The notes below the pieces were generated by a model, which ran no database searches, was not told the DNA's origin, and was given only the letters and a program-made list of their open reading frames with translations. From the IMG/VR virus record IMGVR_UViG_3300030419_004471, positions 1-64,000 of that record: a stretch of 64,000 nucleotides of DNA; one strand, written 5' to 3'. Below are positions 10,724 to 33,209 of this stretch, one piece after another; the first letter of the stretch is position 1, and every line of letters starts with the position of its first letter. The position numbers and the translations under genes are program-made.

Positions 10724-12184
10724 TTAATAAGTAGGTTTAATTATTTTTAAAAGATTCTTTTTAAATTTAGTTGAAATTATTTTATCATAATTTTTTACAA
10801 TATCAAATAAAAATTTTCTATTATACTCAATAATTGGTTTAATATTTTCCATCCATTCTAATTTTTCAGAATCACTTAAATTTGTCAATCTAACTATCTC
10901 TCCCATAATCAGTTCACATCTATCTTCAGCCTTTCTAACTGTATCATATGTTTCATCAATAAAAGGTGAGAATGTTTTAAATCCAATATCTCTTAATTCT
11001 TTTAAAGTTCCTTGACTACCAAAAACTATAAATGGATGACTTTGACCAATCGGTTTAAATACTTTTTCAGAAATATAGTATTCACCAGGATGTGCAGATG
11101 TTTCTGTTACTACTGAAAACATTGAATCATTATAAACCGATGCATCTTCCCAAAACAAACCATCTAATTTTTGTAAATCCTTATGGTCATAATGAAAGCT
11201 TGGTCTATTATCTCTTATATCAAATAAATACTTATCTATAAATTTAAAATCCATCCACTCACGCTTAGCTATAATTTCTAAGTCTTTTGTTTCGTTAATA
11301 TTATCATCTATTGTAAAATCATATGTTACTAAATTTTTTTCTAATAAACCATATTGTTTTAACTTAGCTAATAAATAAAGTCTATGTGTTCTCAATCTTC
11401 TATTAAGACAATTAAAATCATATTTCTTTTTTTCTATAACATATTTCTTTGATATTCTATCAAATTCCTCATTTCTATATTCCTTTAAAAATTCTTCACC
11501 CTTTGCTCTATATACCCAATGGCTATAAAGTACATTCATTGGATTTTCTATTTTATAATGCCCAATAATATATTTCATCCATCTTTCTTGATTGAACCCA
11601 GCAAATGTAAAAATTACTTTATTTGCTGGTATCTTAAATTTTTCTAATAGTTTGTGAAATGAATCGATAGTAGTATGATGCATAATCCCCTCCCAATGAT
11701 AATTTACAAACAAATAAAAGTTTTGTTCATTTTGTAAATAATTTAAAGCTTTCTTAGAAATTTTACCAACTCCTTCATTTCTATAAGATTGTTTACTTGC
11801 TGGATTATCTTCTACTTCTTCTTCTATAGGGTTTAAGAAGTGTTGACCGCTACCATGCAAATCTACAATGTAAAGATATACATTACCATCATTGACTTTT
11901 ATATTAGATATATTTTTATATTCAATTGGTAAATTTTCTAATTCCTTTATAAACGGTATTTTCCTTACAGTATGAGGAATTCCACCATATTTTATATTTA
12001 CATTTTTATCAATTAATTGACTCACTTTCCAATATGCAGGTTCACCATCTGGCCACTGGGCATCAACTTTAGATTTTTTGGAATCCAAGTGTTGTCTCAT
12101 TTCATCTGTATAATTTATAATATCAAATGCATTTGGAAAAGTTTCCCAATCAAATTCATAATCATGCACATAGTAAAACTTCAT
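10724..12184 (-). CDS. Putative glycosyltransferase, GT10 (fucosyltransferase)-like C-terminal domain
   Basis: FSVVTET...YYISEKVFKPI...HPFIVFG...GFKTF; paralogue of 12186..13649. Confidence 0.55.
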   Translation of the reverse strand: MKFYYVHDYEFDWETFPNAFDIINYTDEMRQHLDSKKSKVDAQWPDGEPAYWKVSQLIDKNVNIKYGGIPHTVRKIPFIKELENLPIEYKNISNIKVNDGNVYLYIVDLHGSGQHFLNPIEEEVEDNPASKQSYRNEGVGKISKKALNYLQNEQNFYLFVNYHWEGIMHHTTIDSFHKLLEKFKIPANKVIFTFAGFNQERWMKYIIGHYKIENPMNVLYSHWVYRAKGEEFLKEYRNEEFDRISKKYVIEKKKYDFNCLNRRLRTHRLYLLAKLKQYGLLEKNLVTYDFTIDDNINETKDLEIIAKREWMDFKFIDKYLFDIRDNRPSFHYDHKDLQKLDGLFWEDASVYNDSMFSVVTETSAHPGEYYISEKVFKPIGQSHPFIVFGSQGTLKELRDIGFKTFSPFIDETYDTVRKAEDRCELIMGEIVRLTNLSDSEKLEWMENIKPIIEYNRKFLFDIVKNYDKIISTKFKKNLLKIIKPTY

Positions 12185-12185
12185 A

Positions 12186-13649
12186 TTAAATTGCTTTCTT
12201 TTTCATTTCAGTTATCTCATCAAGTATTTCAGTATCTTCTAATGTATAATCATATGCCATAAAATGATTAAAATTATGTTCGACTATTGGTTTAACATTT
12301 TTCATCCATTCTAATTTCTCTTCGTCAGTTTGATTACATAGTCTTTGTATCTCTGCACCAATAACAGAAAATCTTGCAACATCTTCTTTTATTTCATCAT
12401 ATGTTTCATCTATATATGGGTGAAATGTTTTAAAACCTTTTTCTTTTAAAAATTTTAAGATGCCTGGTTTTGCAAATAAAATAAATGGATGATTGTGCAT
12501 CATTGGTTTTAAAACTTTTTCTGATATATAGTGTACTTTACTTCCTTCAAAGAAATAAGATTCAGAAACTATAGTAAACATAGAATCTTTATATGGTATA
12601 TCATTTTCCATACGCAATCCGTGTATCTCTTCTGTATTTTCTATATCAACTACCTTTTTTGGTTGCTCTATCCATAATTGTGAATATTCTCTCAAATAAT
12701 CCCTCCAGTTGAATGGGTCTTTATCAGAAACAAGTGGATAATCTCTATTTGTATAGTCATTACCTTCTATTAACCAATGCCATCCGTGCTGAAACGTAAA
12801 TCCTAAAGAATGCAAATCATATGATACTAAATTTTTATCTAATAATTTAACCAATCGTAAAAAACATAATAATAAAATTCTATGTGGTCTTATTTGCCTT
12901 AATAAACAATTAAAATCGTATTTCTTTTTTTCTACTTTATATTCTAAATTAAATGATTGATTACTTTCAGAAGTTCTAAATTTTTTATATTCATCAATTA
13001 TAGGTCTATAATAACCTGGCATATATTGTAATGGCCATACATAAGAGATAAAGTTTAATTTTTTGTTTATTATATCTGATTTAGATATCTCATTCCACCA
13101 ATCATCTATATCGTGATTTCCATATACGAAATAAATTTTATCTTCTGGTATTTCATATTTTTTCATCCACTTATAGAGATTTTCCATTTCGCTAGTATAA
13201 ACAATTCCTTCATAAAAATAATTAATCATTAAATAAAAATTGGGAGATGTTTTAACTTCTTCTACTACATCTTTGGTTATTTTATCAAATACCATATTTT
13301 CATAATCCCCAATAGAATTGATTGCTTCAGAATAAAGTGCTATTGGATAGAAAAATAATGTTTTTCTAAACTTAGGTTTTAATTTTTTTTTGTAATGATA
13401 AAAACTTACAGAAGGATGTACTCCTATAAAATTAGGGACTTGATTATATGCTTGTGGTGCGGTTTTATATTTTTTTGAATACCAATCTACATATTGCCCA
13501 GAATCCATTTTTTTTGTATCATCATAATATTCAGCAAAAGCTTCTAAGTTAATACAATTGTGAGTACTTTGATATGCTTCAAACCATTTTGATTCTGGCT
13601 CTACTGATGGGAAGTTGTAGTCATAAACAAGTTGAACATCATAGTGCAT
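12186..13649 (-). CDS. Putative glycosyltransferase, GT10-like; tandem paralogue
   Basis: FTIVSES...YISEKVLKPM..HPFILF...GFKTF; shares EKKKYDFNCL and IDETYD with neighbour. Confidence 0.55.
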   Translation of the reverse strand: MHYDVQLVYDYNFPSVEPESKWFEAYQSTHNCINLEAFAEYYDDTKKMDSGQYVDWYSKKYKTAPQAYNQVPNFIGVHPSVSFYHYKKKLKPKFRKTLFFYPIALYSEAINSIGDYENMVFDKITKDVVEEVKTSPNFYLMINYFYEGIVYTSEMENLYKWMKKYEIPEDKIYFVYGNHDIDDWWNEISKSDIINKKLNFISYVWPLQYMPGYYRPIIDEYKKFRTSESNQSFNLEYKVEKKKYDFNCLLRQIRPHRILLLCFLRLVKLLDKNLVSYDLHSLGFTFQHGWHWLIEGNDYTNRDYPLVSDKDPFNWRDYLREYSQLWIEQPKKVVDIENTEEIHGLRMENDIPYKDSMFTIVSESYFFEGSKVHYISEKVLKPMMHNHPFILFAKPGILKFLKEKGFKTFHPYIDETYDEIKEDVARFSVIGAEIQRLCNQTDEEKLEWMKNVKPIVEHNFNHFMAYDYTLEDTEILDEITEMKKKAI

Positions 13650-13658
13650 ATTGAAGTT

Positions 13659-14207
13659 TTATTGATTATAATATAGTTCTGGATATTCTACTATAATATG
13701 TATCCCACCATCAGATAATGCTTTCTTATATGCTGGGAGTATTTTTTCTACTTTATCTAATTTGTGAATAGTAGAGTTTGTAACTATTTGTTCAAAAGCA
13801 TCTGTATAATCTGCTTTGTGTTGATGACCAGGGTCTAATGGTTTATCACTTCCCTTACCAACTCTTACAATTACATTTGGTTTCCACTCACCATCAGACA
13901 TTGCTTCCAATTTATCTAAATGATTTACTAACTGATTACAAGCGAGAATTAAAAAATCCCAACGTGGATAAAAAGTAACTACTTGATGACCAGCCATAGC
14001 CAATCCCATAGTCATTCCCATTTGGGTTTCTTCCATTACTGGTGTTTCTATCATTCTCTCTTTTGGTAATCCCTCAATGGTTTTACTCATTGGGTTACCA
14101 TAATAAACTATTTGTTGTCCGATGAATATTGTTTTATCATCTTCCATCGTAAGTTTCATTGCTTCAGTTAAAGCATCTAAATAAGGTGTGTATTCTGGGT
14201 TTGCCAT
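13659..14207 (-). CDS. TPP-dependent enzyme beta subunit (E1-beta/transketolase pyrimidine-binding domain only)
   Basis: ETPVMEETQMGMTMGLAMAG, NQLVNH, GHQH motifs; 182 aa. Confidence 0.85.
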   Translation of the reverse strand: MANPEYTPYLDALTEAMKLTMEDDKTIFIGQQIVYYGNPMSKTIEGLPKERMIETPVMEETQMGMTMGLAMAGHQVVTFYPRWDFLILACNQLVNHLDKLEAMSDGEWKPNVIVRVGKGSDKPLDPGHQHKADYTDAFEQIVTNSTIHKLDKVEKILPAYKKALSDGGIHIIVEYPELYYNQ

Positions 14208-15193
14208 TATGGTTTTGAATTTGGGTTATATTCGTGTTTATGTTCTTTGTACCAATCGAGTGCATCTTTCAATCCACTCCTTAAATCGTATTTTGGTTTC
14301 CATCCTAACTTTCTCAATTTCTCATTTGATAATAATCTCTTTGGAATCATAGGGGCTTTGTTGTTTACGAATTCGATAGGATTGTCGTTATCCTCCAATT
14401 CTTTGATAAGTTCTAATACTTCCATTACAGTATGCCCTTTACCGTAACATACATTATAGATATCATATTCATCTACATTCTCTGCTACACATATGAATCC
14501 ACTTACCATATCATCAACGTGAATAACATCTCTAACTTCAGTTCCATCTCCCCAAAGTGGAATAGGATTTAAATTATCTGCTACCTTTCTAATATTAGCA
14601 GGTGTTACGTGGCATTTTTCGAAATCATACTTATCATTTGGTCCGAATGCATTTGATGGTCTTATAATTACGCATTGCATCGGGTTATGTATTTGGTTTG
14701 AGAAGAATTCACAAAGTGTTTCTCCATATCTTTTCATCCAACCTACTGCTTTATATACAGGATATATGTTTGGAGTTTGTACATTCATATCTTCAGTACA
14801 ATATTCATCCCCTACATCAGGATATGTTGTATTTGATGATATAAACATAAATTTACGAACTTTGTTTCTCCAACTTTGTTCCATTAAGTTTACATTCATC
14901 TCTACATTAGGTGTAACGTGTAATAGTGGGTTTACTTTAGTGTCTAATGCATTCGATGTGTTAGCTGCTGCATGAAATACTACATCTACATCTTTAGATA
15001 CCTTCTCACAGAAGTCTGCATCTTGTAGATTACCTATTATATGTTCCGTTTTCCATTTATAGTCATCTCTTAAGTCTCTACTATATGATGTAGTTCTGAT
15101 ATTGGTGTATCCATTATCGTATAACATCTTTACCAACCTCGAACCAATGAATCCACTAGCTCCCGTTACTAATATTTTGTCTTTTTTCTTCAT
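14207..15193 (-). CDS. NAD-dependent epimerase/reductase (GDP-L-fucose synthase-like SDR)
   Basis: VTGASGFIG, RPSNAFGPND, WGDGTEVRD; likely start MKKKDK at 15193. Confidence 0.85.
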   Translation of the reverse strand: MKKKDKILVTGASGFIGSRLVKMLYDNGYTNIRTTSYSRDLRDDYKWKTEHIIGNLQDADFCEKVSKDVDVVFHAAANTSNALDTKVNPLLHVTPNVEMNVNLMEQSWRNKVRKFMFISSNTTYPDVGDEYCTEDMNVQTPNIYPVYKAVGWMKRYGETLCEFFSNQIHNPMQCVIIRPSNAFGPNDKYDFEKCHVTPANIRKVADNLNPIPLWGDGTEVRDVIHVDDMVSGFICVAENVDEYDIYNVCYGKGHTVMEVLELIKELEDNDNPIEFVNNKAPMIPKRLLSNEKLRKLGWKPKYDLRSGLKDALDWYKEHKHEYNPNSKP

Positions 15194-16118
15194 AATGTTT
15201 ATATGTGTTTTTAATTCCTTGTTCAAATCCTAATTTTGGTAATAATCCATATTCCTCTTGTATTTTAGTACTCATTTTTCTCCTCATATCACCGTTGGGC
15301 TTAGAAGTGTCCCAATTTATGTTAATTTCTTTACCACTAACCTTTGAAACGGTCTCAATCATCCTTTTTATTGATATTTCTTCACCACTTCCTAAATTAG
15401 TTGTTATATGTAGTTTATCTTCGAAGCATTTTATACATCCATTAGCTACATCACCAGCATAAATGAAATCTCTTGTTGGTGTACCATCTCCCCATGCTTC
15501 TATTTCACCATCAGAGTCATAAATCTTTCTACAAGTAGCTCCAATAACAGTAGCACCCTCTCCAAAGTTATCATATTCTCCAAATATGTTAGCAGGTCTA
15601 ACAATTGTCCATTTATCATACCCATGCTGAACCTTATATGCTTCTAAATAAAGTTCTGGTATTCTTTTACTCCAAGATGGAAACCAATCATTGGGAGATG
15701 GTAGTGTATTCCAAACCGAATCTTCTACAAATTCTTCTGCGGGTTCATAAACTCCAACTGATGACATAAAAACTAACCAACAATTGTGTTTATGAGAATT
15801 ATCTATAATGTTTGTATTAACTTTTATCGATGGTTCTAAGAAATCTAATGGTTTTTCTTTAGCTCTTATAGGTGAACCCTTTATTCCAAATGCATTAATA
15901 ACTCCATTAAAGTTATAATGGTCAAATAATACATTAACCTCATCAGAATCTCTTAAATCCATATCTTGAAATATAAATCTATCACTATCAGGTAATTCTT
16001 TGGAATATTTTAAATCGACTCCTACAACAGAGTAATCATAATCCAATAATTTATGAACTAAATGAGTTCCAACTAACCCACTACATCCCGTAACTAATAT
16101 TCTTCCTTTTGTTCCCAT
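15156..16118 (-). CDS. NAD-dependent epimerase/reductase (GDP-L-fucose synthase-like SDR)
   Basis: VTGCSGLVG, RPANIFG, WGDGTPTRDFIY, WDTSKPNG; likely start MGTKG at 16118 (TAATG overlap). Confidence 0.85.
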   Translation of the reverse strand: MGTKGRILVTGCSGLVGTHLVHKLLDYDYSVVGVDLKYSKELPDSDRFIFQDMDLRDSDEVNVLFDHYNFNGVINAFGIKGSPIRAKEKPLDFLEPSIKVNTNIIDNSHKHNCWLVFMSSVGVYEPAEEFVEDSVWNTLPSPNDWFPSWSKRIPELYLEAYKVQHGYDKWTIVRPANIFGEYDNFGEGATVIGATCRKIYDSDGEIEAWGDGTPTRDFIYAGDVANGCIKCFEDKLHITTNLGSGEEISIKRMIETVSKVSGKEININWDTSKPNGDMRRKMSTKIQEEYGLLPKLGFEQGIKNTYKHYEEKRQNISNGS

Positions 16119-16759
16119 TAAAATACCACCCATTTACCAGTACCATAATGCGGGTACTTCGATTCATACTTATAATAGATTACATCTTCTGGTATTTCTC
16201 TTTGAATACCACCCCAAGTATCTAATGTTGGTGTATTTGTTGATACACCATTATCTTCTACCACAAAATAAAGTGGTAAATCGTAATTTCTAGCATATTT
16301 GTGTACTTCATAGAAGATTCCACTCTCAAAAGCCATATCTCCTACAAAAACCCATACCTTTTCATCACTTTTTTTAAGTTTAAGTGCCTTTGCAACACCT
16401 AAAGCTATTGGTAATGTACCTGTTACGATTGCAGATGCATAAAATTTACAATCCTTTTCTACAATTGTTATAGATTTACCATCTAATATTTTCTTTTTTA
16501 ACTTTTTTGGTTCTATTCCGTGCAATAATCCGTGGTAATGAGACCTCCAAGTAGAAAAAACCCAATCCGTTGGATGTATTTTTGAAAATATTTTGATTAA
16601 TTGCTCTTCGTTACCATTTGATAAATGAACTGGACCTGTTATTTCTCCGTTTGACCAATGCGTTATGATATCATCTTCGAAATCTATCAAATCTTGCTTT
16701 GACCAATTACCTTCTGTCCATCTATCTTTGTGATAATCTAAATTATTTATCTTTCCCAT
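16118..16759 (-). CDS. TPP-dependent enzyme alpha subunit (E1-alpha-like)
   Basis: HLSNGNEE, STWRSHYH, TPP-binding GDMAFESG...VEDN. Confidence 0.87.
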   Translation of the reverse strand: MGKINNLDYHKDRWTEGNWSKQDLIDFEDDIITHWSNGEITGPVHLSNGNEEQLIKIFSKIHPTDWVFSTWRSHYHGLLHGIEPKKLKKKILDGKSITIVEKDCKFYASAIVTGTLPIALGVAKALKLKKSDEKVWVFVGDMAFESGIFYEVHKYARNYDLPLYFVVEDNGVSTNTPTLDTWGGIQREIPEDVIYYKYESKYPHYGTGKWVVF

Positions 16760-17318
16760 TTTTATCTCTTTTAGAAATTATTGGATTAGCGCAAGGCCAT
16801 TCTATATTGAACTCTTTGCTATTCCATTTTATTGTTTGTTGTTTATCTACATCATTAAATTCACCTTCATATGCCATCTTATAATAAAATATTGAATCCT
16901 TTTCCATTACATAATGTCCATTGGCAAATCCTGGTGGAATTAATACCTGTATTCGTGTTGATGGTGATAAAATAAAGTTCTCCCACTTTCCTGTCTTTAT
17001 ATCTAATACAACTAAATATATCTTTCCACTTAGACACGATACCATCTTCCAAGTCTTATCATCATAATGCAATCCTCTAAGAACATTAAATTCAGATTTA
17101 GAGTATCTATCATGCTTAAATTGTACTCCTCTATCTCGTTCTTCTAATGGAATTAATGAATCGTAATAATCAGAATGATATGTTGTTGAAATTTCTCCTC
17201 GTGATTCGTAATATACCGATGGATTTATTACTGTAACTCCAGGTAATACTTTGGAAGTATAAAATGGAAAATCATTCCACTTTCTTTCTTTATAATATGT
17301 ACTATGTTTGATTTCCAT
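16743..17318 (-). CDS. rmlC: dTDP-4-dehydrorhamnose 3,5-epimerase-like (cupin)
   Basis: SRG, VLRGLHY, IPPGFANGH, YYK motifs. Confidence 0.88.
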   Translation of the reverse strand: MEIKHSTYYKERKWNDFPFYTSKVLPGVTVINPSVYYESRGEISTTYHSDYYDSLIPLEERDRGVQFKHDRYSKSEFNVLRGLHYDDKTWKMVSCLSGKIYLVVLDIKTGKWENFILSPSTRIQVLIPPGFANGHYVMEKDSIFYYKMAYEGEFNDVDKQQTIKWNSKEFNIEWPCANPIISKRDKNGKDK

Positions 17319-18270
17319 AACCTAAAGGGAATCCGTTCCTATATTTTGAACTTAAATCCGATATTAAAATGTTATATGTTTTAATTAATTCTACTATTCC
17401 TCTATCTAAATTAAATTGTGGAGTCCACATTGTTTTTTCCAACTTTTCATTAGATACTATATAATCTCTTTTGTCAGGATCTTGATAATAATCAGAATAA
17501 GTTACTGCAAAATCTGGTATGTATTCTTGTATTTTCTCTACTAACTCTTGCTTTGATAAATTTGCGTTAGATAAACCTACATTAAATACTTCTCCACTAT
17601 ATTTTTCATATCTGTCCATCATAAATACAAATGTATATGCAACATCTCTAATATGAATATAGTTTCTTTTAAAATTCTTTTCAAAAATAGTAATGTACTT
17701 ATCAGTTAATGCTTTATATACAAATTCATTAACCAACAAATCCATTCTCATTCTTTGGGATGAACCAAAGACGGTGGCAAGTCTTAATGAAATGCCACCA
17801 ACTTTCAATACCTCTCGTTCTGCATCAATCTTCGTTATTCCATAATGAGATATTGGGTTTAGAGGACTATCTTCGGTACATATACCATCCTCTCCTATTC
17901 CGTATCCGCTATTTGTATTCGGATATAATATTTTTTGAGTTTTTGTTAGGTTATTACAAATAAATTTTATATGTTTGTAATTAACATCAGTTGCGAGTTT
18001 CTTATCTCTATCACAAGCTGGAAATCCAACTATAGCTGCTAATGGAACAATCACATCAGCTTCTTTTACATAAGGTAGTAGTTTTTTATGGTTTCTAACA
18101 TCACCATTTATAAATTCAAAGTTTGTTCTCCAAGAATGTCCTATTAATGATGTTTGATTGTACATCAAATTATCATATACTGTTAGTTTTGTTATTCCAC
18201 CATTTCTTAATAGAGTTTCAACTAATATTGAACCTAAATAACCTGCTCCTCCTGTAATTAATATCTTCAT
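17302..18270 (-). CDS. NAD-dependent epimerase/dehydratase (extended SDR)
   Basis: ITGGAGYLGS, LAAIVG, YGITK (YxxxK), RLATVFG. Confidence 0.9.
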   Translation of the reverse strand: MKILITGGAGYLGSILVETLLRNGGITKLTVYDNLMYNQTSLIGHSWRTNFEFINGDVRNHKKLLPYVKEADVIVPLAAIVGFPACDRDKKLATDVNYKHIKFICNNLTKTQKILYPNTNSGYGIGEDGICTEDSPLNPISHYGITKIDAEREVLKVGGISLRLATVFGSSQRMRMDLLVNEFVYKALTDKYITIFEKNFKRNYIHIRDVAYTFVFMMDRYEKYSGEVFNVGLSNANLSKQELVEKIQEYIPDFAVTYSDYYQDPDKRDYIVSNEKLEKTMWTPQFNLDRGIVELIKTYNILISDLSSKYRNGFPLGYGNQT

Positions 18271-18668
18271 TCTATAGTAACTTTTTCTTTTTCTTGAACT
18301 TTATCGTAAAAATCTTTTTCGAATTCGTTAAAATCTTTTATATCTTTACCATTTATTTTTATTTTAATATTTCTTTCTGAATTTAATATCCAATTTATTG
18401 TAGTTGGTGATAAATTTTCAATATTACATTCTTTATCATAATCAATTGGGAATATAAATGATTCATTTTCATCATATCCTACTTTATGTGCTTCTAAAAT
18501 ACTCCAACATTTTATATTATTGTTATCATCTTTATATAAATGATTTTTTGTTGGTTCTTCTTTAGATGCTATTGTATTTTTTTTAAACTCATTTAATAAT
18601 TTGTTTTTATCATATCCATTAAGACAATAACCATTTGGTTCTACTATTTCAAATAAAAAATCTATCAT
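18267..18668 (-). CDS. Hypothetical protein
   Basis: 133-aa ORF, ATGA-coupled on both sides. Confidence 0.65.
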   Translation of the reverse strand: MIDFLFEIVEPNGYCLNGYDKNKLLNEFKKNTIASKEEPTKNHLYKDDNNNIKCWSILEAHKVGYDENESFIFPIDYDKECNIENLSPTTINWILNSERNIKIKINGKDIKDFNEFEKDFYDKVQEKEKVTIE

Positions 18669-19402: not shown

Positions 19403-19406
19403 ATAA

Positions 19407-20969
19407 TTATTTTTGTATATATAATTGTTTATCGTGGTTAAACTCTATGTTACCCCACTTATGATAAAGCTCATCAAATTCAGGAAATACTTTTAAAAAG
19501 TCTGTTCCTCTTCTTTTATCGTGTGCTTTCATAAAGTTATGAAAGTTTAATCTGGTTTTATTTACCCAAGATTCATCTGCTATTTCACCATATGGTTTTT
19601 TGAAATCTCCCTCCATCCAATCGTGAAGTCTTTTAATTTTTTGTATTTCAATATCAGAATATCCAACATAATCATATCCGAAAGATGGAATTCCATAATA
19701 AAACATAAGTTTAGCTTGGTCAAATACTTTTTTGTTCCAAGATTTTGGTAATATTTGTACGGCTTGATGGGGTGGATGTCTTAAATAAGATGTATCTAAG
19801 AAAACAGCTGATTCCCAAAATCTATCACTACTACCATATTCGTGCTTTAGCTGATATACTCCATCAAGTAATTTATGATAACTTGGAACTGATAATGCGT
19901 TGTAAGTACTCATAATAGTAATATTAACTCTTGGACATTTAGTTAATATTGTATTCATATTATTCCAAAATCTATTAAATACTAATCCGTGTCTTGCATA
20001 TTCAGCTTGTTGACCCCATCCATCAACTGAAGTAAATATAATAAATTCTTTTACTCTTCTTTCATCACATATTCTATTTATCTTATCACAAAATTTATCA
20101 ATTAACTCATCGGGTACTCCCAAATTTGAATTTATTGCTAATTGTAATTTTCTATTTGGTTTTGGTTGCTCAATTATATAATCTAAAACTTTCCAAGTAT
20201 CTTTAGATAATAAAGGTTCTCCTCCAGTAATTCTAAAAGTATGTAAATCCCAATATAGGTCAGGCCACCATTTCCAAAATGCTTCTACATAAGGATTATG
20301 TTCTGTTTGTTTTTGAGGCCACTTATCTTCAATCTGATGTTGTTTTATACCATTAAAATCATCAGTAGTTGGATACCCTCCATACTTTTCTATCTCTTGT
20401 TGCCAAGTTGTTGAATATGCAGGTCCACAATATGAACATTTGAAGTTACAAGTATGTGAGAATGATACCTCAACATAACGTGGATTAAAATCTCCTCTCC
20501 AATCAGATTTTCGTATCTCATCATAATGGGGTTTAGACCAACTTTCGTTTGATTTAAATGTCCTATCTGAAAAGTGGTTTGAATTATCCTCTACATTCCA
20601 ACAATAACCACATTCTTTTGGTCTTTTGTTTTCCAACATCTCTTTTCTTCTAAGCTTCTTAAATCTTGTATTGTGAAGTGCAGATGGATTTCTTTTTATT
20701 TCAGCTTCAGATACTTTATGTGTTCCAGGGTGGTGACAGGAATGATTATGTCCTGTCTGCATTTGTATTGTAACTTGTGTCCATTTCGCTAAACAAAATC
20801 CACAACCAACATCATCCAGCTTAGTTTTCATTTCACGGAAGTCTTGATTTTCATATATAAAATCATTTCCTTTAGGAGCAATATCTTTATGTTTCTCTTG
20901 CTCCTTCTTTACCGCATCCCTTTGTTCTTGTGCCGCCTTATCTAAATTCTCTTTTAATGCTTCTGACAT
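19407..20969 (-). CDS. Radical SAM protein with N-terminal twitch/SPASM-like Cys cluster
   Basis: CNFKCSYC (CxxxCxxC), TGGEP; N-terminal CLAKW...SCHH...CGYCW. Confidence 0.9.
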   Translation of the reverse strand: MSEALKENLDKAAQEQRDAVKKEQEKHKDIAPKGNDFIYENQDFREMKTKLDDVGCGFCLAKWTQVTIQMQTGHNHSCHHPGTHKVSEAEIKRNPSALHNTRFKKLRRKEMLENKRPKECGYCWNVEDNSNHFSDRTFKSNESWSKPHYDEIRKSDWRGDFNPRYVEVSFSHTCNFKCSYCGPAYSTTWQQEIEKYGGYPTTDDFNGIKQHQIEDKWPQKQTEHNPYVEAFWKWWPDLYWDLHTFRITGGEPLLSKDTWKVLDYIIEQPKPNRKLQLAINSNLGVPDELIDKFCDKINRICDERRVKEFIIFTSVDGWGQQAEYARHGLVFNRFWNNMNTILTKCPRVNITIMSTYNALSVPSYHKLLDGVYQLKHEYGSSDRFWESAVFLDTSYLRHPPHQAVQILPKSWNKKVFDQAKLMFYYGIPSFGYDYVGYSDIEIQKIKRLHDWMEGDFKKPYGEIADESWVNKTRLNFHNFMKAHDKRRGTDFLKVFPEFDELYHKWGNIEFNHDKQLYIQK

Positions 20970-20993: not shown

Positions 20994-22436
20994 TTATAAC
21001 TTAACATTTATTAATTTTGCTTTTGGATTTATTTCTTCAACTCCAACTAACTCATATTTTAGTTGTTTAATACCATCCGATTTATAATCCCAATTACCTT
21101 GCTGCATTTCTAAAACGTATCTTCTTTCATTTGCAGCTGTAGTTTCTCCTTTAGCCCATCTATCTTGTCCTTTATCATCGGTAATTAATCCTTCATCTTT
21201 ATGAGGTAAACAAGTCATTCTACCTTCTCTTCTATGTGGTATTGGTGCTTGTGCTATCGTTATCTCATCTTCTCCTGTTATTATAGTATCTACGTTACCA
21301 TCGTTATCATTACCACTAATATCTTTAGCCTCACCCTCATTAAATTCATAATGTAATTTTAATCCGTCTGATGGGATTTCATTCATTAAATTTTTGATTT
21401 CTTCTGTTTCTAATTTTCTGTTCCATAACATAACCTTTGCTATATCACCTTTAAAGAATTTATTTACATCTCTCTCACCAACTGAAGTTGTGTATCCTAT
21501 AGTATATGGTACTGAACCATATCTTTTTAAACTACCTTCATATTTTTGTGGTGAATGAGTTCCATGCCCATGCCTTGCATCTGATTCTCTTCCATTTAAA
21601 TAAAAATGAATAAAATTATTTTCAGTATCAACTGTTAATGTAACCCAACTCCAATAATTTTCGTATCTCTTCATCCATTGATATAAAGCTTCTTTTTTAT
21701 TATTCCATAAAAGTGCAGTATATGCTCTACTATTGTTATAAGATAATCCCCAATCATATCCTGCTCTTCTTATAATTGGATATTCAGTAAATCTTCTATC
21801 ATAATCACCAACTAACCAAATTGGTACTTTGTGTTCTTGTTGATTTGCTCTAACTAAAACTGAAACAGTATGTGATTTAGTAGTAAGGTGAGCTGTATCT
21901 CTATTTGTTGGTATTGTTACTCCAGAATTTATTCCATTAAAAGAAAAGAACTCTTGATGACCTAATTTTGTTTCTTTTACATCCGCCATTCCTTCTAAAT
22001 AACATCTCCAGAATAAATCATCATCTTCCATTCCCCAATCCCAATAATCATTAGAATATCCATTTGTTTTTTCTACTTGTTCTTTAGAAAATATTACTGC
22101 TCCTCCAAAATATTCTTGATATTTTAATTGATAATCCATTTGAGATATGTTCGTTGCAATATGAATTGGATATTTTTCAGGAAAAGAATAATCACATCCT
22201 TCTTCTGGTATCATATCTATATCATGCCAAACAACATAATCACATCCTTCTTTAAATGCCCATTCAGCAGCTACATTCTTCATAGCTCCCCTATTAAAAA
22301 GTTTATCATCTACTTGATGACCAAAATACATACAATAATCTATTCCTTTAGATTCTAAATATGCTCCAACTTTTGGTACAAACTCTTTTAAGTGAGCTTC
22401 TCTATTTCTATATGGTACACAAACTCCTAATTTCAT
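20994..22436 (-). CDS. GT7 (beta-1,4-galactosyltransferase-like) glycosyltransferase with inserted LamG-like domain
   Basis: VPYRNR, FNRG, HDIDM (DxD), YFGG, NGYSNDYWDWGMEDDD; central ConA-like insert. Confidence 0.88.
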   Translation of the reverse strand: MKLGVCVPYRNREAHLKEFVPKVGAYLESKGIDYCMYFGHQVDDKLFNRGAMKNVAAEWAFKEGCDYVVWHDIDMIPEEGCDYSFPEKYPIHIATNISQMDYQLKYQEYFGGAVIFSKEQVEKTNGYSNDYWDWGMEDDDLFWRCYLEGMADVKETKLGHQEFFSFNGINSGVTIPTNRDTAHLTTKSHTVSVLVRANQQEHKVPIWLVGDYDRRFTEYPIIRRAGYDWGLSYNNSRAYTALLWNNKKEALYQWMKRYENYWSWVTLTVDTENNFIHFYLNGRESDARHGHGTHSPQKYEGSLKRYGSVPYTIGYTTSVGERDVNKFFKGDIAKVMLWNRKLETEEIKNLMNEIPSDGLKLHYEFNEGEAKDISGNDNDGNVDTIITGEDEITIAQAPIPHRREGRMTCLPHKDEGLITDDKGQDRWAKGETTAANERRYVLEMQQGNWDYKSDGIKQLKYELVGVEEINPKAKLINVKL

Positions 22437-22439
22437 AAT

Positions 22440-22910
22440 TTAATCTAATTCCATTTTTCGTTCAAAGTATTTTGCATCTTCAATACACTTTGGATTTTGT
22501 TTTATAGTTTGCATTGCTATCATATCTTTCATCTTGGTTGTTGACCAACCATGTGCTCTAGTAGTATATACAATCTTTGGAGGTAAGTCATCACCTGTAA
22601 AGGGTTTACCTATATAATCTTCACCCAAAATTCTTATATCCGGCTTAAAGAACTCAATTAATTTATAAAGTTCTTTTTCGGTTTGATATACATATACTTC
22701 ATCTATATATTTTATAGCCATCAACGTTCTATATCTTTCGTGTAATGGTATAACTGGTTTGTATTTTGATTTCCTATGTTCATTCGGGTCTCTCTGTAAG
22801 AATACTATAAACTTATCACAATGTTCTTTTGCTGCTTCAAAGGTATAAATGTAACCTGGATGAATCAAATCAAAATTACCCGCCGTAAATCCTACTATTT
22901 CTTTTTTCAT
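22440..22910 (-). CDS. Cytidylyltransferase (TagD/glycerol-3-phosphate cytidylyltransferase-like)
   Basis: GNFDLIHPGY, GEDY, RAHGWSTT motifs. Confidence 0.85.
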   Translation of the reverse strand: MKKEIVGFTAGNFDLIHPGYIYTFEAAKEHCDKFIVFLQRDPNEHRKSKYKPVIPLHERYRTLMAIKYIDEVYVYQTEKELYKLIEFFKPDIRILGEDYIGKPFTGDDLPPKIVYTTRAHGWSTTKMKDMIAMQTIKQNPKCIEDAKYFERKMELD

Positions 22911-23065
22911 TTTATTCCACCATTTTCAATTGTGTCTATCATAGTTATTATCTGGTCGTGCCATTTACTATAAGTGTCTCTATCGCCTTCCCAAGTTGCC
23001 TGTTCGCATCTTGTTTTATAAAAATCTCTAATTATTACTAATAATTTAACTATTACGCTCTTCAT
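22907..23065 (-). CDS. Small hypothetical protein (52 aa)
   Basis: Not in ORF track; MKSVIVKLLVIIRDFYKTRCEQATWEGDRDTYSKWHDQIITMIDTIENGGIK; ATGA overlaps at both ends. Confidence 0.7.
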   Translation of the reverse strand: MKSVIVKLLVIIRDFYKTRCEQATWEGDRDTYSKWHDQIITMIDTIENGGIK

Positions 23066-24507
23066 AATTCTGCTACAATATAGTTAACATCTACTGAACC
23101 ATTTTCTACTCCAAATTTTAATTTATTATCACTAACAGTTTTATATTTTAATGTTTCTATACCATCTCTTCTCCAATTAGTTTCACCTTTTAAAACTTCA
23201 TTGTAAAATCTTAATTGGTTTTTTCTTGTTTCGGTATAAATCCATTTGTTTTCATAAAATCCATTATCTTCGTGAAATAATAGTTTAAATTTAGATTCTC
23301 TTCTCCAAGGAACTACTTCTTCTTGATAAGCTTCTGTATGTGGGCTTTGTACTCTATTACAATAATGTACTTTTCCGTCAACTTTGTTACCGCTCAAATC
23401 ATATAATTGATGGTTGGTTGATGCTTTTGCATCGTAAGCTACTTCCAAACAATGTGGAGTTGTATAACCATCATATCCTTCACTAACACCAAGATATAAG
23501 TTATTATAAACTGCTTCAACTTGTCCTGGTTCTAATGAATGATTCCAAACTGCGAATTGATGAATCAATCCCTTAAATCCTCTACGATTATTTGCAGATT
23601 TTGGAAGTGTCTTACCTAAATACATAAATTTCTCATTGTGGTAAGGTAGTAATCTTCCTTTGAATGTTGCTTCATCGATTAATTTACCATCCTGATATAA
23701 TTTTATGAATTTATTATATTGGTCTACAACAACCATTAAAGTTGTTCTGCGTTCAGTTTGTATTGTTGATTTTAAACTTATACATTGTTTACTTGTTGTA
23801 AAAGTTTCGAATTTGTATCTTCTAAAAGAATTAAATGTAAATCCAGTATCGTAACCTGGTACTGCTACAATAGAATATTCATCTATTTCTAAATCTTCTC
23901 TACAATCTATTTTATAAGGTTCGCATTCTAATAGCATAGTGTAATTATCTAAACCAAATTTCATTGGTATTTTAACTTCACTATCCCAACCATTGAATTC
24001 TAAACCTACGGTATTCCAAGTTTTAATTGGTGTTTGTTTTTTATTTAAATCAAAGAAGTTTTCTTTACATCTAAATAATAAGTCATCATCCTCATATCCC
24101 CAGCCCCAATATTCGTTAGAGTAACCATTTATTTTATAATAGTCCATTATAGGAAATAAGGTTACTCCACCAAAATATGAATCGAATATGACTCTCCTCT
24201 CACCAACATCTGATTCGAAGTTTGTAGCAAGGTGTGTAGGTCTATTGACATATGAATAATCTACATCAATAGGTAGCATATCTACATCATGCAGGGCTAT
24301 GTAGGTACATCCTAACTTCTTTGCCTTCTCAACACCAATGTTGAGTAGTTTACCTCTATTAAATGGTTTATCATCAGCTTGTTCAGCAACAATCAATTCA
24401 TATTTGATTTTTTGCTTCTTTAAATGAGATGATATAGATGTTATAAATTGGTTAAGATGTGCCCTACGATTTCTGTAGGGAACAATTATACCAATCTTAT
24501 TTATCAT
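23062..24507 (-). CDS. GT7 glycosyltransferase with inserted LamG-like domain (paralogue of 20994..22436)
   Basis: IVPYRNR, FNRGKLLN, HDVDM, YFGGV, NGYSNEYWGWGYEDDD. Confidence 0.88.
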   Translation of the reverse strand: MINKIGIIVPYRNRRAHLNQFITSISSHLKKQKIKYELIVAEQADDKPFNRGKLLNIGVEKAKKLGCTYIALHDVDMLPIDVDYSYVNRPTHLATNFESDVGERRVIFDSYFGGVTLFPIMDYYKINGYSNEYWGWGYEDDDLLFRCKENFFDLNKKQTPIKTWNTVGLEFNGWDSEVKIPMKFGLDNYTMLLECEPYKIDCREDLEIDEYSIVAVPGYDTGFTFNSFRRYKFETFTTSKQCISLKSTIQTERRTTLMVVVDQYNKFIKLYQDGKLIDEATFKGRLLPYHNEKFMYLGKTLPKSANNRRGFKGLIHQFAVWNHSLEPGQVEAVYNNLYLGVSEGYDGYTTPHCLEVAYDAKASTNHQLYDLSGNKVDGKVHYCNRVQSPHTEAYQEEVVPWRRESKFKLLFHEDNGFYENKWIYTETRKNQLRFYNEVLKGETNWRRDGIETLKYKTVSDNKLKFGVENGSVDVNYIVAEL

Positions 24508-32835: not shown

Positions 32836-33209
32836 TTTATAATTCTATTTATCCAGTTATATCTTTTTCTCATTTTTAAATACATTAAATCTTTATCATT
32901 ATCATAAGCTTCTCTTTCAAATGAAATATTGTAATATGCTTTTGCTCCATAAAAAGGTAATTTTAATATCCACTCCAAAACATATAAAATATAAAATGGA
33001 ATTACTCCTAATTCTAATGCTTGTTGAAAATGAATTGTTTCGTGATTTATAGTTTCAATACCTCTTTGTTTCCAAAAATCATTACCATCTCTATATTTTT
33101 CTCTTAAAATAATAAATGGAAAAAGAGATATTCCGCCTATCCTCATAAACAAGCCTATAGTATCTAAAAACTTATCGTTGTATTTTATAAATGGTTTCCA
33201 ATTTTTCAT
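32832..33209 (-). CDS. Small HExxH metallopeptidase-like membrane-associated protein
   Basis: INHETIH, hydrophobic segment, ISFEREAY. Confidence 0.6.
   Translation of the reverse strand: MKNWKPFIKYNDKFLDTIGLFMRIGGISLFPFIILREKYRDGNDFWKQRGIETINHETIHFQQALELGVIPFYILYVLEWILKLPFYGAKAYYNISFEREAYDNDKDLMYLKMRKRYNWINRIIK

What the first reader, a model, noticed from the sequence alone, without database searches (positions are those of the whole stretch)
13659..18270. Branched-chain sugar pathway: minimal TPP E1 alpha/beta pair interleaved with RmlC and three SDRs
Seen: gene order SDR, RmlC, E1-alpha (213 aa), SDR, SDR, E1-beta (182 aa, lacking the C-terminal domain), with no E2/E3 in the window. Established: TPP enzymes (YerE; AviB1/B2) transfer a pyruvate-derived C2 unit onto NDP-4-keto-6-deoxy sugars to give branched sugars such as yersiniose and eurekanate. 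Inference: this is not a pyruvate dehydrogenase auxiliary gene pair but makes an unusual branched sugar. Both fucose-synthase-like SDRs lack the catalytic Tyr of YxxxK (VGWMK, PSWSK), hinting at altered chemistry or a heterodimer.
Basis: partly seen in the sequence, partly recalled or inferred. Interest (0 to 1): 0.65.

Follow-up and report, generated by a model that had tools for sequence, protein, structure and literature searches.

The report
Heptose-sugar cassette with minimal TPP enzyme
A large marine T4-like phage carries a Campylobacter-type set of enzymes that oxidise, epimerise and reduce nucleotide-heptose sugars, joined to a stripped-down two-subunit thiamine enzyme that is not a pyruvate dehydrogenase. 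This thiamine enzyme is uncharacterised, is widespread in SAR11, CPR bacteria, DPANN archaea and phages, and most likely adds a carbon branch to the 4-keto sugar.

Summary
The six genes are real, co-directional and overlapping, and they lie in a complete 213.6 kb far-T4-like marine phage genome.

- **SDR1** matches PDB 6VO6 at E=3e-99. From memory this is C. jejuni Cj1427, the GDP-heptose C4-dehydrogenase.
- **"RmlC"** matches the C. jejuni 4-keto-heptose C3/C5-epimerases (E~1e-45).
- **The two "fucose-synthase-like" SDRs** match the MlghC/DdahC C4-reductases.
- **The E1 alpha/beta pair** (213/182 aa) belongs to a distinct, truncated TPP family. TPP-binding and catalytic residues are invariant. 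The two chains are predicted to bind (ipSAE 0.88, best control 0.00). They are fused in two cyanophages and adjacent in cells. The family forms its own clade, outside housekeeping E1.

In 41 of 61 cellular loci and 69 of 80 phage loci the pair lies near either a Cj1427-like oxidase or a GDP-heptose 4,6-dehydratase. These two entry enzymes almost never co-occur.

Best reading: a TPP-dependent acyl (C2) transfer onto an NDP-4-keto-heptose. The chemistry is inferred, not shown.

Both reductase-like SDRs do lack the canonical Tyr, and this is a family trait. SDR3 keeps a conserved Tyr one helical turn upstream.

Verdict: new variant of a known kind.

The parts
17302..18270 (-). SDR1, 322 aa. Homologue of a Cj1427-type NDP-heptose C4-dehydrogenase, the likely generator of the 4-keto sugar. 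YGITK and TNSGYG motifs are intact.
   Evidence: PDB 6vo6/6vo8 at E=3e-99 over residues 2-302. Motifs are conserved in 26 family members. Cj1427 chemistry is taken from PMC10680097. The identification of 6VO6 as Cj1427 is from my own memory and was not verified with the tools.
16743..17318 (-). RmlC-fold cupin, 191 aa. Homologue of the NDP-4-keto-heptose C3/C5- or C3-epimerases MlghB/DdahB.
   Evidence: Matches 8db5, 8dco, 7an4, 7m14 and 8dak at E=1e-45 to 1e-39, against 3e-19 for true RmlC. PF00908 scores 115 bits. TIGR01221 rmlC scores 100 bits, below its 155.75 cut-off. It lies immediately upstream of E1-alpha in 59 of 80 viral loci.
16118..16759 (-). Minimal E1-alpha-like TPP (PP-domain) subunit, 213 aa. 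Carries GDM...EDN cofactor motifs and a family-specific C-terminal PHxGxG motif.
   Evidence: PF00676 positions 6-168 of 300. Best PDB match is human PDH E1-alpha at only E=2e-8. Family invariants are H45, E51, R72, H74, Y75, G140-D141, E168-D169-N170 and P203-H204. It belongs to a clade separate from full-length E1-alpha.
15156..16133 (-). SDR2, 325 aa. GFS/MlghC-like, with Rossmann motif TGCSGLVG. The canonical Tyr is Pro (PSWSK), and the GFS epimerase residues Cys109 and His179 are absent.
   Evidence: Alignments. The subfamily motif [FY]-[PA]-G-W-A-K-R is conserved.
14207..15226 (-). SDR3, 339 aa. MlghC/GFS-like. The canonical Tyr is Val (VGWMK), but a conserved Tyr sits at K-7. Cys109 and His179 are absent.
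   Evidence: Alignments (7anh = MlghC, E=2e-26). The subfamily motif Y-x-x-V-G-W-M-K-R is conserved.
13659..14207 (-). Minimal E1-beta-like (PYR-domain) subunit, 182 aa, with no C-terminal transketolase_C / E2-binding domain. Catalytic Glu59 and Gln129-His130 are present.
   Evidence: NF006667 positions 7-140 of 327. PDB 1ik6 at E=1e-10. E59, R82, F85, Q129, H130 and E174 are 100% conserved in 71 sequences. Predicted alpha-beta complex: ipSAE 0.88 in 3 runs, best of 3 controls 0.00, partner pLDDT at least 89, contacts 100% reproducible; the mark was reached by 51 of 78 solved complexes and 2 of 108 mismatched pairs.
33206..34096 (-). RmlB-like NDP-glucose 4,6-dehydratase, 296 aa. Lies outside the finding. 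It is an alternative source of a 4-keto sugar.
   Evidence: TIGR01181 at E=2e-83; PDB 2hun at E=8e-60; STDEVYG and YSATK motifs present.
22440..22910 (-). Small nucleotidyltransferase, 156 aa, RfaE-domain-II / TagD-like. Likely performs heptose-1-phosphate nucleotide activation.
   Evidence: TIGR02199 at E=5e-18; phrog_7878 at E=6e-31. Its partner, an RfaE-domain-I-like PfkB kinase, lies at genome position about 109 kb.
19407..20969 (-). Twitch-domain radical SAM enzyme, 520 aa. Conserved upstream neighbour of the cassette in phages.
   Evidence: NF033640 at E=5e-102. Present in 46 of 80 viral loci.
10724..13649 (-). Two paralogous virus-specific proteins of 487 and 486 aa, directly downstream of E1-beta. 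Possibly GT10-like glycosyltransferases; this is a lead only.
   Evidence: 35% identity, E=2e-64. Atlas: virus-only clusters, nearest named family GT10 at 0.80. At least one of the pair co-occurs in most viral loci: unk486-like in 62 of 80, unk487-like in 26 of 80.
20994..24507 (-). Two GT7 (beta-4-GalT-like) glycosyltransferases, each fused to a ConA/LamG domain, flanking the nucleotidyltransferase.
   Evidence: Conserved in relatives.

Best explanation
The region is a phage-borne nucleotide-heptose tailoring operon of the Campylobacter capsule type, with one extra step carried out by a minimal two-subunit thiamine-diphosphate enzyme.

Proposed order of events:
1. An NDP-D-glycero-manno-heptose is the substrate. 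It is supplied by the phage's RfaE-I-like kinase and RfaE-II-like nucleotidyltransferase together with host enzymes.
2. SDR1, the Cj1427 homologue, oxidises it at C4.
3. The cupin epimerises C3 and/or C5 of the 4-keto intermediate.
4. The alpha/beta TPP enzyme decarboxylates a 2-oxo acid, most simply pyruvate, and adds the resulting acyl carbanion to the C4 carbonyl. This gives a 4-C-acyl tertiary alcohol, the same chemistry as YerE and as proposed for AviB1/B2 and Pau11/12. The active site lies at the subunit interface, with alpha binding the diphosphate and Mg2+ and beta Glu59 activating the cofactor.
5. The two MlghC-like SDRs, whose catalytic Tyr is displaced or lost, reduce the new exocyclic carbonyl or a remaining ring carbonyl.
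6. The neighbouring GT7-LamG and GT10-like proteins transfer the product to an unknown acceptor on the virion or the host surface.

**Shown by tools:** the gene content; the homologies; conservation of the cofactor and catalytic residues; the predicted alpha-beta binding; separation from housekeeping E1; and tight, near-universal linkage to enzymes that make NDP-4-keto-heptoses.

**Inferred:** that the 4-keto sugar is the acceptor; that the donor is pyruvate; that the branch goes on C4; and what the two atypical SDRs do.
For: **Homology to the heptose trio.**
- SDR1 matches 6vo6 at E=3e-99.
- The cupin matches the GDP-4-keto-heptose epimerases at E~1e-45, against 3e-19 for RmlC.
- SDR2 and SDR3 match MlghC, DdahC and GFS (PDB-to-enzyme mapping).
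- The pathway chemistry of Cj1427, Cj1430 and Cj1428 comes from PMC10680097.

**Heptose context.**
- The phage has RfaE-I-like and RfaE-II-like genes.
- Neighbours of the pair in 14 cellular loci are enriched in GHMP kinase (9 ORFs), NTP_transferase (8 ORFs) and SIS_2 (3 ORFs), out of 91 ORFs scanned.
- The cyanophage versions sit beside GmhA, a kinase and a nucleotidyltransferase.

**The E1 pair is an active heteromeric TPP enzyme.**
- Cofactor and catalytic residues are invariant across 71-79 sequences.
- Alpha-beta fusions occur in P-TIM68, S-SM2 and metagenomes.
- Beta lies immediately downstream of alpha in 60 of 62 cellular loci.
- Predicted complex: ipSAE 0.88 against a best control of 0.00, partner pLDDT at least 89, 100% contact agreement. 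The mark was reached by 51 of 78 solved and 2 of 108 mismatched pairs.

**Link to 4-keto sugars.**
- A Cj1427-like or a GDP-heptose 4,6-dehydratase-like gene (7us5, E=1.5e-101) lies within 6 kb in 41 of 61 cellular loci and is directly adjacent in 25.
- One or the other occurs in 69 of 80 viral loci, and both together in only 1. They behave as interchangeable entry enzymes feeding the same downstream step.

**Precedent.** E1-type alpha/beta pairs are genetically required for C2 branches on 4-keto sugars. YerE and ErwE show the chemistry in vitro.
Against: - No enzyme of this minimal family has been assayed. The actinomycete precedent with known lengths, Pau11/12, is a full-length pair, and the relation of the minimal family to these precedents was not tested.
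- The pair could act before nucleotide activation. One homologue is fused to an APH-type kinase, and the cyanophage versions sit next to a kinase and a Zn-ADH.
- 16 of 61 cellular loci, mostly DPANN, show none of the four companion enzymes within 6 kb.
- If C4 becomes quaternary, the need for two C4-reductase-like SDRs is unexplained except by the repurposing hypothesis.
- The nucleotide carrier is unclear. The Campylobacter enzymes use GDP-alpha-heptose, whereas the phage's activation genes resemble the ADP-beta-heptose route. The phage lacks GmhA and a GHMP kinase.
- That 6VO6 is Cj1427 rests on my memory and on the depositor's generic title.
Confidence: 0.5

Rival explanations
1. The acceptor is an NDP-4-keto-6-deoxy-hexose made by an RmlB-type dehydratase, giving a yersiniose- or eurekanate-like branched 6-deoxyhexose rather than a heptose.
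For: - The window encodes an RmlB-like 4,6-dehydratase at 33206-34096.
- The genome encodes a beta-PGM / glucose-1-P nucleotidyltransferase fusion.
- MlghB can use GDP-4-keto-mannose substrates (abstract of PMC7949155).
Against: - The dehydratase lies 15 kb away, beyond the tail-fibre gene.
- Every companion in the operon has its best match in heptose-specific enzymes.
- Related loci carry GmhA, HddA, HddC or RfaE genes.
- RmlB-like genes at E<1e-60 are not among the regular neighbours.
Confidence: 0.17
2. The pair is a DXS- or transketolase-like carboligase acting on a free or phosphorylated sugar, upstream of nucleotide activation. It would build or extend the carbon chain (for example a 1-deoxy-ketose, a heptulose, or an octose/nonose precursor). 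Alternatively, it adds C2 to an aldehyde elsewhere on the NDP-sugar, extending the chain rather than making a C4 branch.
For: - Weak matches to DXP synthase and transketolase PP domains.
- An APH-kinase fusion, P0203.
- In cyanophages and in L016 the fused gene abuts a PfkB kinase, a Zn-ADH and GmhA.
- 16 of 61 cellular loci lack 4-keto-forming companions.
Against: - The strongest and most widespread linkage is to NDP-4-keto-heptose-forming enzymes and to the 4-keto-sugar epimerase, which lies immediately upstream of alpha in 59 of 80 phage loci.
- The two alternative 4-keto generators are mutually exclusive. This is what one expects if the keto sugar is the shared substrate.
Confidence: 0.2
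3. An auxiliary pyruvate/acetoin dehydrogenase E1 that feeds the host's E2/E3 and boosts acetyl-CoA supply during infection.
For: Automatic names given by sources, such as 'pyruvate dehydrogenase E1 component alpha subunit'. The best PDB sequence hits are PDH E1.
Against: - Beta lacks the C-terminal domain, and alpha lacks the C-terminal third.
- Alpha scores 79.7 bits against a cut-off of 393.85.
- It forms a clade separate from the housekeeping E1-alpha of the same genomes.
- There is no E2 or lipoyl domain in the phage.
- It is invariably embedded in glycan clusters.
Confidence: 0.03
4. The pair is a helper for SDR1 cofactor recycling. It would make or remove the 2-oxo acid, or another carbonyl compound, that reoxidises the tightly bound NADH of a Cj1427-type ping-pong dehydrogenase.
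For: Cj1427 needs alpha-ketoglutarate to reoxidise its bound NADH. SDR1-like genes are directly adjacent to the pair in 10 cellular loci.
Against: The pair is linked equally often to the 4,6-dehydratase type, which recycles its own cofactor and needs no external oxidant: 21 cellular and 17 viral loci without SDR1.
Confidence: 0.05

Closest known systems
Campylobacter jejuni capsular heptose modification enzymes: Cj1427 (MlghA) C4-dehydrogenase, DdahA 4,6-dehydratase, MlghB/DdahB epimerases, MlghC/DdahC C4-reductases
   Same: SDR1, the cupin, SDR2 and SDR3 have their best or near-best solved-structure matches in these enzymes. SAR11 and some phage versions use a DdahA homologue in place of SDR1. 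The logic is the same: make a 4-keto NDP-heptose, epimerise it, then reduce it.
   Different: No TPP enzyme is part of the Campylobacter pathways as described in PMC10680097 (the term 'thiamine' does not occur in that paper). The reductase homologues here have lost or displaced the catalytic Tyr. The phage's activation genes resemble the ADP-heptose (RfaE) route rather than the GDP (HddA/HddC) route.
AviB1/AviB2, Pau11/Pau12 (Plm8/Plm9), EvdU5/EvdS3: PDH-E1-like pairs for two-carbon branches of eurekanate and paulomycose
   Same: A heteromeric E1 alpha/beta-type TPP enzyme without E2/E3, encoded in a sugar cluster next to enzymes that make 4-keto sugars. The proposed chemistry is transfer of a pyruvate-derived C2 unit to C4.
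   Different: Pau11/Pau12 are full length at 325/345 aa, against 213/182 aa here. They work in actinomycete antibiotic pathways on deoxyhexoses or a pentose, possibly after glycosyl transfer. Phylogenetic relatedness to the minimal family was not tested. None has been reconstituted in vitro according to the papers read.
YerE/YerF (yersiniose A) and ErwE/MyGE
   Same: ThDP-dependent addition of an acyl unit from a 2-oxo acid to an NDP-4-keto sugar, followed by SDR reduction of the side-chain carbonyl. This is the mechanistic model for the E1 alpha/beta step and for a role of SDR2/SDR3.
   Different: YerE is a single-chain, acetolactate-synthase-type flavoprotein from a different ThDP superfamily branch, and it acts on a CDP-3,6-dideoxy sugar.
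Heterotetrameric 2-oxo acid dehydrogenase E1 (PDH, BCKDH, AcoAB)
   Same: The fold of the PP and PYR domains, the GDx...N cofactor motif, the catalytic Glu59 and the His of the beta subunit, and the alpha-beta interface.
   Different: The alpha C-terminal third and the whole beta C-terminal domain are missing. There is no E2/E3. The clade is separate, the scores are far below family cut-offs, and the genomic context is glycan synthesis.
Cyanophage 'transketolase central region-containing protein' (P-TIM68, S-SM2)
   Same: Same family, at 44% and 41% identity to alpha. These are alpha-linker-beta fusions that end exactly where the window's beta ends. They sit in sugar clusters with GmhA, a kinase, a nucleotidyltransferase and SDRs.
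   Different: They are fused rather than split, carry the canonical GDG motif, and have Zn-ADH and kinase neighbours rather than the Cj1427/MlghB/MlghC-like set. Their function is unannotated.

Membership tests
2-oxo acid dehydrogenase E1 (heterotetrameric PDH/BCKDH/AcoAB type) | TPP/Mg2+ motif in alpha (GDG...NN) and the cofactor-activating Glu in beta | tested here: met
   GDM...EDN in alpha, with D141 and N170 at least 98% conserved. Beta E59 is 100% conserved.
2-oxo acid dehydrogenase E1 (heterotetrameric PDH/BCKDH/AcoAB type) | Full-length alpha (about 320-370 aa), and beta with a C-terminal transketolase_C domain that docks E2 | tested here: not met
   Alpha is 213 aa and covers model positions 6-168 of 300. 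Beta is 182 aa and covers 7-140 of 327. Family medians are 204 and 182 aa.
2-oxo acid dehydrogenase E1 (heterotetrameric PDH/BCKDH/AcoAB type) | Score above the curated family cut-off, and placement within the E1 clade | tested here: not met
   TIGR03182 scores 79.7 bits against a cut-off of 393.85; NF006667 scores 52.6 against 321. The minimal family is one clade (89/75), apart from six full-length E1-alpha from the same genomes (99/94).
2-oxo acid dehydrogenase E1 (heterotetrameric PDH/BCKDH/AcoAB type) | Works with E2 (lipoyl acyltransferase) and E3 | tested here: not met
   No 2-oxoacid_dh domain and no lipoyl domain in the 213.6 kb genome. Use of a host E2 is not testable here.
E1-type sugar C-branching pairs (AviB1/B2, Pau11/12) | Alpha/beta TPP pair encoded in a nucleotide-sugar cluster beside a 4-keto-sugar-forming enzyme | tested here: met
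   A Cj1427-like or DdahA-like gene occurs within 6 kb in 41 of 61 cellular loci and on the locus (up to about 8 kb either side) in 69 of 80 viral loci.
E1-type sugar C-branching pairs (AviB1/B2, Pau11/12) | Sequence or phylogenetic affiliation with AviB1/B2-type proteins, and the same (full-length) architecture | tested here: inconclusive
   Architecture differs: Pau11/12 are 325/345 aa. No AviB or Pau sequence was available to the tools, so no tree was built.
E1-type sugar C-branching pairs (AviB1/B2, Pau11/12) | Transfer of a pyruvate-derived C2 unit to C4 of the sugar | not testable with these tools
   Requires an enzyme assay or a glycan structure.
Cj1427-type NDP-heptose C4-dehydrogenase | Close sequence similarity over the full length, and the SDR Thr/Tyr/Lys triad | tested here: met
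   6vo6 at E=3e-99 over residues 2-302. TNSGYG and YGxxK are conserved. That 6VO6 is Cj1427 is from memory.
Cj1427-type NDP-heptose C4-dehydrogenase | [quoted passage not shown] | not testable with these tools
   These are biochemical properties.
dTDP-4-dehydrorhamnose 3,5-epimerase (RmlC proper) | Score above the equivalog cut-off | tested here: not met
   TIGR01221 scores 100.4 bits against 155.75. The Pfam superfamily model PF00908 is met at 115 bits. The best structures are the heptose epimerases.
GDP-L-fucose synthase / MlghC-type C4-reductase | Ser-Tyr-Lys triad with Tyr at K-4 | tested here: not met
   SDR2 has Pro and SDR3 has Val at the Tyr column. This is conserved in both subfamilies. 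SDR3 has Tyr at K-7.
GDP-L-fucose synthase / MlghC-type C4-reductase | GFS epimerase dyad Cys109/His179 (a GFS feature only) | tested here: not met
   In the alignments to E. coli GFS, SDR3 has Asn at both the Cys109 and the His179 position, and SDR2 has Val and Tyr. The dyad is defined.

The most novel reading that the evidence does not exclude
The minimal E1 alpha/beta pair defines an unrecognised, very widespread thiamine-dependent step in nucleotide-heptose metabolism. It would produce a new class of C-acyl-branched or chain-extended heptoses (eight or more carbons). These sugars would decorate the surfaces of SAR11, SAR116, CPR bacteria and DPANN archaea, and the virions or infected hosts of abundant marine jumbo-sized T4-like phages. 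The Tyr-displaced MlghC-like SDRs would have been repurposed as side-chain ketoreductases.
Probability: 0.35. Interest if true: 0.78.

Novelty: new variant of a known kind. Interest (0 to 1): 0.62.

Why it matters
Heptose tailoring has been worked out only in Campylobacter and a few antibiotic producers. C-acyl branching of sugars has been shown biochemically only for ALS-type enzymes such as YerE and ErwE.

This cassette ties a compact, uncharacterised TPP enzyme to NDP-4-keto-heptose chemistry. The family is large: at least 527 IMG/VR contigs, 149 loci among GTDB species representatives, and thousands of marine metagenome proteins. It occurs in some of the most abundant organisms and phages of the ocean.

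If the inference holds, three things follow:
- It predicts an unknown sugar in the hypervariable surface-glycan islands of SAR11 that govern phage recognition.
- It gives a function to the 'transketolase central region' genes of cyanophages.
- It supplies a small (about 400 aa in total) carboligase scaffold for making tertiary-alcohol sugars.

Tried and rejected
- **DNA similarity to cultured phages.** blastn of 13000-19500 found nothing.
- **PHROGs and Pfam on the unknown neighbours.** The 133, 245, 328, 486 and 487 aa proteins gave nothing.
- **The 245-aa neighbour.** The Atlas suggests a ConA/LamG-like protein. A single-sequence AF2 model was unusable (pLDDT 38), so no fold search was run.
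- **The search for related loci with the 29-sequence alignment.** It failed because no conserved stretch was found. An 8-sequence alignment worked.
- **PDH auxiliary gene.** Considered and rejected (see rivals).
- **Phosphonopyruvate/sulfopyruvate decarboxylase-like split TPP enzyme.** Rejected, because the domains are of the E1/transketolase type, not TPP_enzyme_N/C.
- **Helper for alpha-ketoglutarate recycling of SDR1.** Rejected, because the pair is equally linked to 4,6-dehydratases.
- **UDP-GlcA decarboxylase role for SDR1 (a eurekanate-like pentose route).** Rejected. SDR1 has no Ser-Glu dyad, and its strongest match is 6VO6.
- **Confirming that PDB 6VO6 is Cj1427.** The two primary papers are not held and full-text searches did not find the code. 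The mapping is therefore from memory.
- **Treede 2005 (AviB1/B2).** Not held.
- Sequencing-run and read-laying tools were not used. No alternative genetic code was needed.

Full report
**What and where.** The window is the first 64 kb of a 213,601-bp IMG/VR virus record that CheckV rates as complete. GC content is about 30%, and essentially every gene is on the minus strand. The record encodes a T4-type portal, a large terminase, a baseplate wedge protein, an SbcCD-like nuclease and a tail fibre with an S74 chaperone domain. Its portal is closest to Microcystis phage Mel-JY01 (53%) and Flavobacterium phage immuto (48%). It is therefore a large 'far-T4' myovirus of unknown host.

**Checking the observation.** Pfam and NCBIfam confirm three extended SDRs, one RmlC-fold cupin, an E1_dh fragment of 213 aa and an E1-beta/Transket_pyr fragment of 182 aa. 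Neither an E2 catalytic domain nor a lipoyl domain is found anywhere in the genome.

**The companions are a heptose set.**
- SDR1 matches PDB 6vo6/6vo8 at E=3e-99 across its whole length. To my knowledge this entry is C. jejuni Cj1427. I could not verify that mapping with the tools.
[quoted passage not shown] The C3/C5-epimerase Cj1430 and the NADPH-dependent C4-reductase Cj1428 act next (PMC10680097).
- The window's cupin matches exactly those GDP-4-keto-heptose epimerases at E=1e-45 to 1e-39, far better than true RmlC at 3e-19. Its TIGR01221 score is below the equivalog cut-off.
- SDR2 and SDR3 match GFS and the heptose C4-reductases MlghC (7ANH) and DdahC (7ANC).
- The phage also has a PfkB kinase resembling RfaE domain I (E=9e-37) and a small nucleotidyltransferase resembling RfaE domain II (E=5e-18). 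It has no GmhA and no GHMP kinase.

**The two atypical SDRs.** In the alignments to GFS and MlghC, the Tyr of the Ser-Tyr-Lys triad is Pro in SDR2 and Val in SDR3. In alignments of 26-28 homologues drawn from E1-containing loci, this is a subfamily trait.
- SDR2-type proteins read [FY]-[PA]-G-W-A-K-R.
- SDR3-type proteins read Y-x-x-V-G-W-M-K-R, with a conserved Tyr seven residues before the Lys, roughly one helical turn upstream of the canonical position.
- Both keep the Rossmann Gly motif.
- Both lack the GFS epimerase dyad Cys109/His179.

For SDR3 an alternative Tyr exists. Whether the displacement re-aims the enzyme at a different carbonyl is my inference.

**The E1 pair.** Alpha retains the diphosphate/Mg2+ motif (GDM...EDN) and the HL...RSHYH elements. 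Beta retains the cofactor-activating Glu59 and the Gln129-His130 pair. These residues are 98-100% conserved over 79 and 71 family members, and median lengths are 204 and 182 aa.

Several lines indicate that the two chains work as one enzyme:
- In P-TIM68 and S-SM2 the two halves are fused by a linker of roughly 40-50 residues, and the fusion ends where the window's beta ends. Similar fusions occur in metagenomes.
- In 60 of 62 cellular loci, beta directly follows alpha.
- A complex prediction gave ipSAE 0.88 in three runs against 0.00 for the best of three controls, with partner pLDDT of at least 89 and 100% agreement of contacts. That mark was reached by 51 of 78 solved complexes and 2 of 108 mismatched pairs. 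Because E1 complexes are solved, the pass may partly be memory and shows likeness rather than binding.

**Not a PDH E1.**
- Scores are far below the curated cut-offs (79.7 bits against 393.85; 52.6 against 321).
- Genomes that carry the minimal pair also carry ordinary E1 genes scoring 180-350 bits.
- In a maximum-likelihood tree of 40 sequences, the 31 minimal sequences form one group (89/75; 87% of bootstrap trees). Six full-length E1-alpha from three of the same five genomes form another group (99/94). DXS- and TK-like sequences served as the outgroup.
- The window's alpha is sister to a SAR116 sequence (98/95) and next to a SAR11 sequence, with 57% identity to the SAR11 sequence.
- Caveat: few full-length E1s were included, and no AviB-type sequences.

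**Distribution.**
- The word-index search found 3,747 proteins. The best 120 listed are 83-97% identical, all but the top hit 83-88%, and come largely from marine metagenomes, Tara among them.
- The exhaustive representative search found 2,367 clusters at E<=1e-3 and 108 at E<=1e-30. Most are about 200 aa. Some carry inteins, and one is fused to an APH-type kinase.
- IMG/VR holds at least 527 contigs.
- Species-representative genomes hold 149 loci. These include Pelagibacteraceae (among them HIMB1412 and AAA795-P11), SAR116, Dehalococcoidia, many CPR bacteria, DPANN archaea, Omnitrophota and Planctomycetes.

**Context statistics.**
- *Cellular loci of at least 8 kb that carry E1-alpha (61).* A Cj1427-like gene (E<1e-60) lies within 6 kb in 22. 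A GDP-heptose 4,6-dehydratase homologue lies within 6 kb in 21; the SAR11 example matches 7us5 at E=1.5e-101. One or the other is present in 41, and directly adjacent in 25.
- *Best 80 viral loci.* SDR1-like in 53, dehydratase-like in 17, either in 69, both in only 1. The cupin is present in 76 and lies immediately upstream of alpha in 59. SDR2 is present in 74 and SDR3 in 66.
- *Neighbours in 14 diverse cellular loci (91 ORFs, each scanned on its own).* Radical SAM 10, GHMP kinase 9, NTP_transferase 8, GT2 8, DegT 6, SIS_2 3. This is the signature of GDP-heptose (GmhA/HddA/HddC) glycan clusters.

The near-perfect mutual exclusivity of two different ways of making an NDP-4-keto-heptose, each next to the TPP pair, is the strongest argument that the keto sugar is the pair's substrate. 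It also argues against a role in recycling the SDR1 cofactor.

**Mechanism proposed.** I propose, by analogy, that alpha/beta decarboxylates a 2-oxo acid and adds the acyl unit to C4 of the epimerised NDP-4-keto-heptose, and that one or both atypical SDRs then reduce the side-chain carbonyl. The analogies are:
- YerE/YerF and ErwE, where the chemistry is shown in vitro.
- The E1-like pairs AviB1/B2, Pau11/12 (Plm8/9) and EvdU5/S3, supported by genetics or proposal only.

The donor, the position of attack and the roles of the SDRs are all inferred. Pau11/12 are full length, so the minimal family is a different lineage of the same superfamily, and I do not file it as a member of that group.

**Alternatives.** The alternatives are a 6-deoxyhexose acceptor, carboligation before nucleotide activation or chain extension, a PDH role, and cofactor recycling. 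They are weighed under rival explanations.

**Interleaving.** The alpha-SDR2-SDR3-beta order is a property of this phage lineage. Alpha and beta are separated in 56 viral loci and adjacent in 10. They are adjacent in cells and fused in cyanophages. I read no functional meaning into the interleaving itself.

**Wider cluster.** The glycan region runs from about 6.9 kb to 27.4 kb, between the packaging genes and the tail fibre. It contains:
- a 1202-aa nucleotidyltransferase-HD protein;
- two paralogous virus-specific proteins (a GT10 lead only);
- a twitch radical-SAM enzyme (NF033640, E=5e-102);
- two GT7-LamG proteins;
- a GT2-like protein and a methyltransferase.

Further sugar genes lie at 32-34 kb (a UGDH-like fragment and the RmlB-like dehydratase), at about 102-111 kb and at about 142 kb. 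The acceptor of the glycan is unknown.

**Literature.** Full-text searches found no paper that links a TPP or E1-like enzyme to heptose modification, and none that discusses the cyanophage 'transketolase central region' genes. The pelagimyophage survey notes rfaE and UGDH among LPS-type genes but not this pair. Absence from this library does not prove that no such work exists.

**Verdict.** The pair belongs to a large, distinct, uncharacterised family. This is a new variant of a known kind, of moderate to high interest.

Noticed in passing
window 32014-33209 (-): The UDP-glucose/NDP-sugar dehydrogenase homologue (273 aa) matches only model positions 67-297 of 413. It lacks the C-terminal domain. 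The 125-aa ORF just upstream has no family match. The gene may be split or degenerate.
   Followed up: no
P0158, P0160 (metagenomic homologues of E1-alpha): Some family members carry an intein or a LAGLIDADG insertion inside the E1-alpha-like gene. Another (P0203) is fused to an APH-type kinase.
   Followed up: partly
L025 (VHCC01000006.1, binned as Pelagibacterales) and L024 (binned as Saccharibacteria): L025 has a 68%-identical alpha and the same phage-type gene order as the window (MT24, GT2, GT7, GT7, rSAM, SDR1, cupin, alpha ... SDR2, SDR3, beta). L024 is a 3 kb contig with a 69%-identical alpha. They look like phage contigs mis-binned into MAGs.
   Followed up: partly
window 6960-10568 (-): A 1202-aa protein combining an N-terminal cytidylyl/adenylyltransferase-like domain with an HD domain. 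In relatives on 275-525 kb contigs it is split into two or three ORFs (L004-L007).
   Followed up: no
window 20994-22436 and 23062-24507 (-); 18665-19402 (-): Two eukaryote-type GT7 (beta-1,4-galactosyltransferase-like) glycosyltransferases fused to ConA/LamG domains, plus a probable stand-alone LamG-like protein. This is unusual equipment for a phage.
   Followed up: partly
G000 about 141.5-143.9 kb (L008:1471-2838, -): A 455-aa fusion of a beta-phosphoglucomutase-like HAD domain with a glucose-1-phosphate nucleotidyltransferase domain.
   Followed up: partly
G000 about 102-111 kb (L023): A second sugar cluster: an RfaE-domain-I-like PfkB kinase, a 282-aa SDR (LegB / heptose-epimerase-like), three methyltransferases and several unknown proteins.
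   Followed up: partly
L004-L007 (ENA contigs of 275-525 kb): Relatives with about 85% identical alpha lie on contigs longer than this 213.6 kb record. They carry a second radical-SAM gene and an extra 269-aa ORF between SDR3 and beta.
   Followed up: no
tree: The phage alpha subunit groups with the SAR116 and SAR11 versions (98/95 and 89/91). This may hint at an alphaproteobacterial host or gene donor. The portal, however, is closest to phages of Microcystis and Flavobacterium.
   Followed up: no
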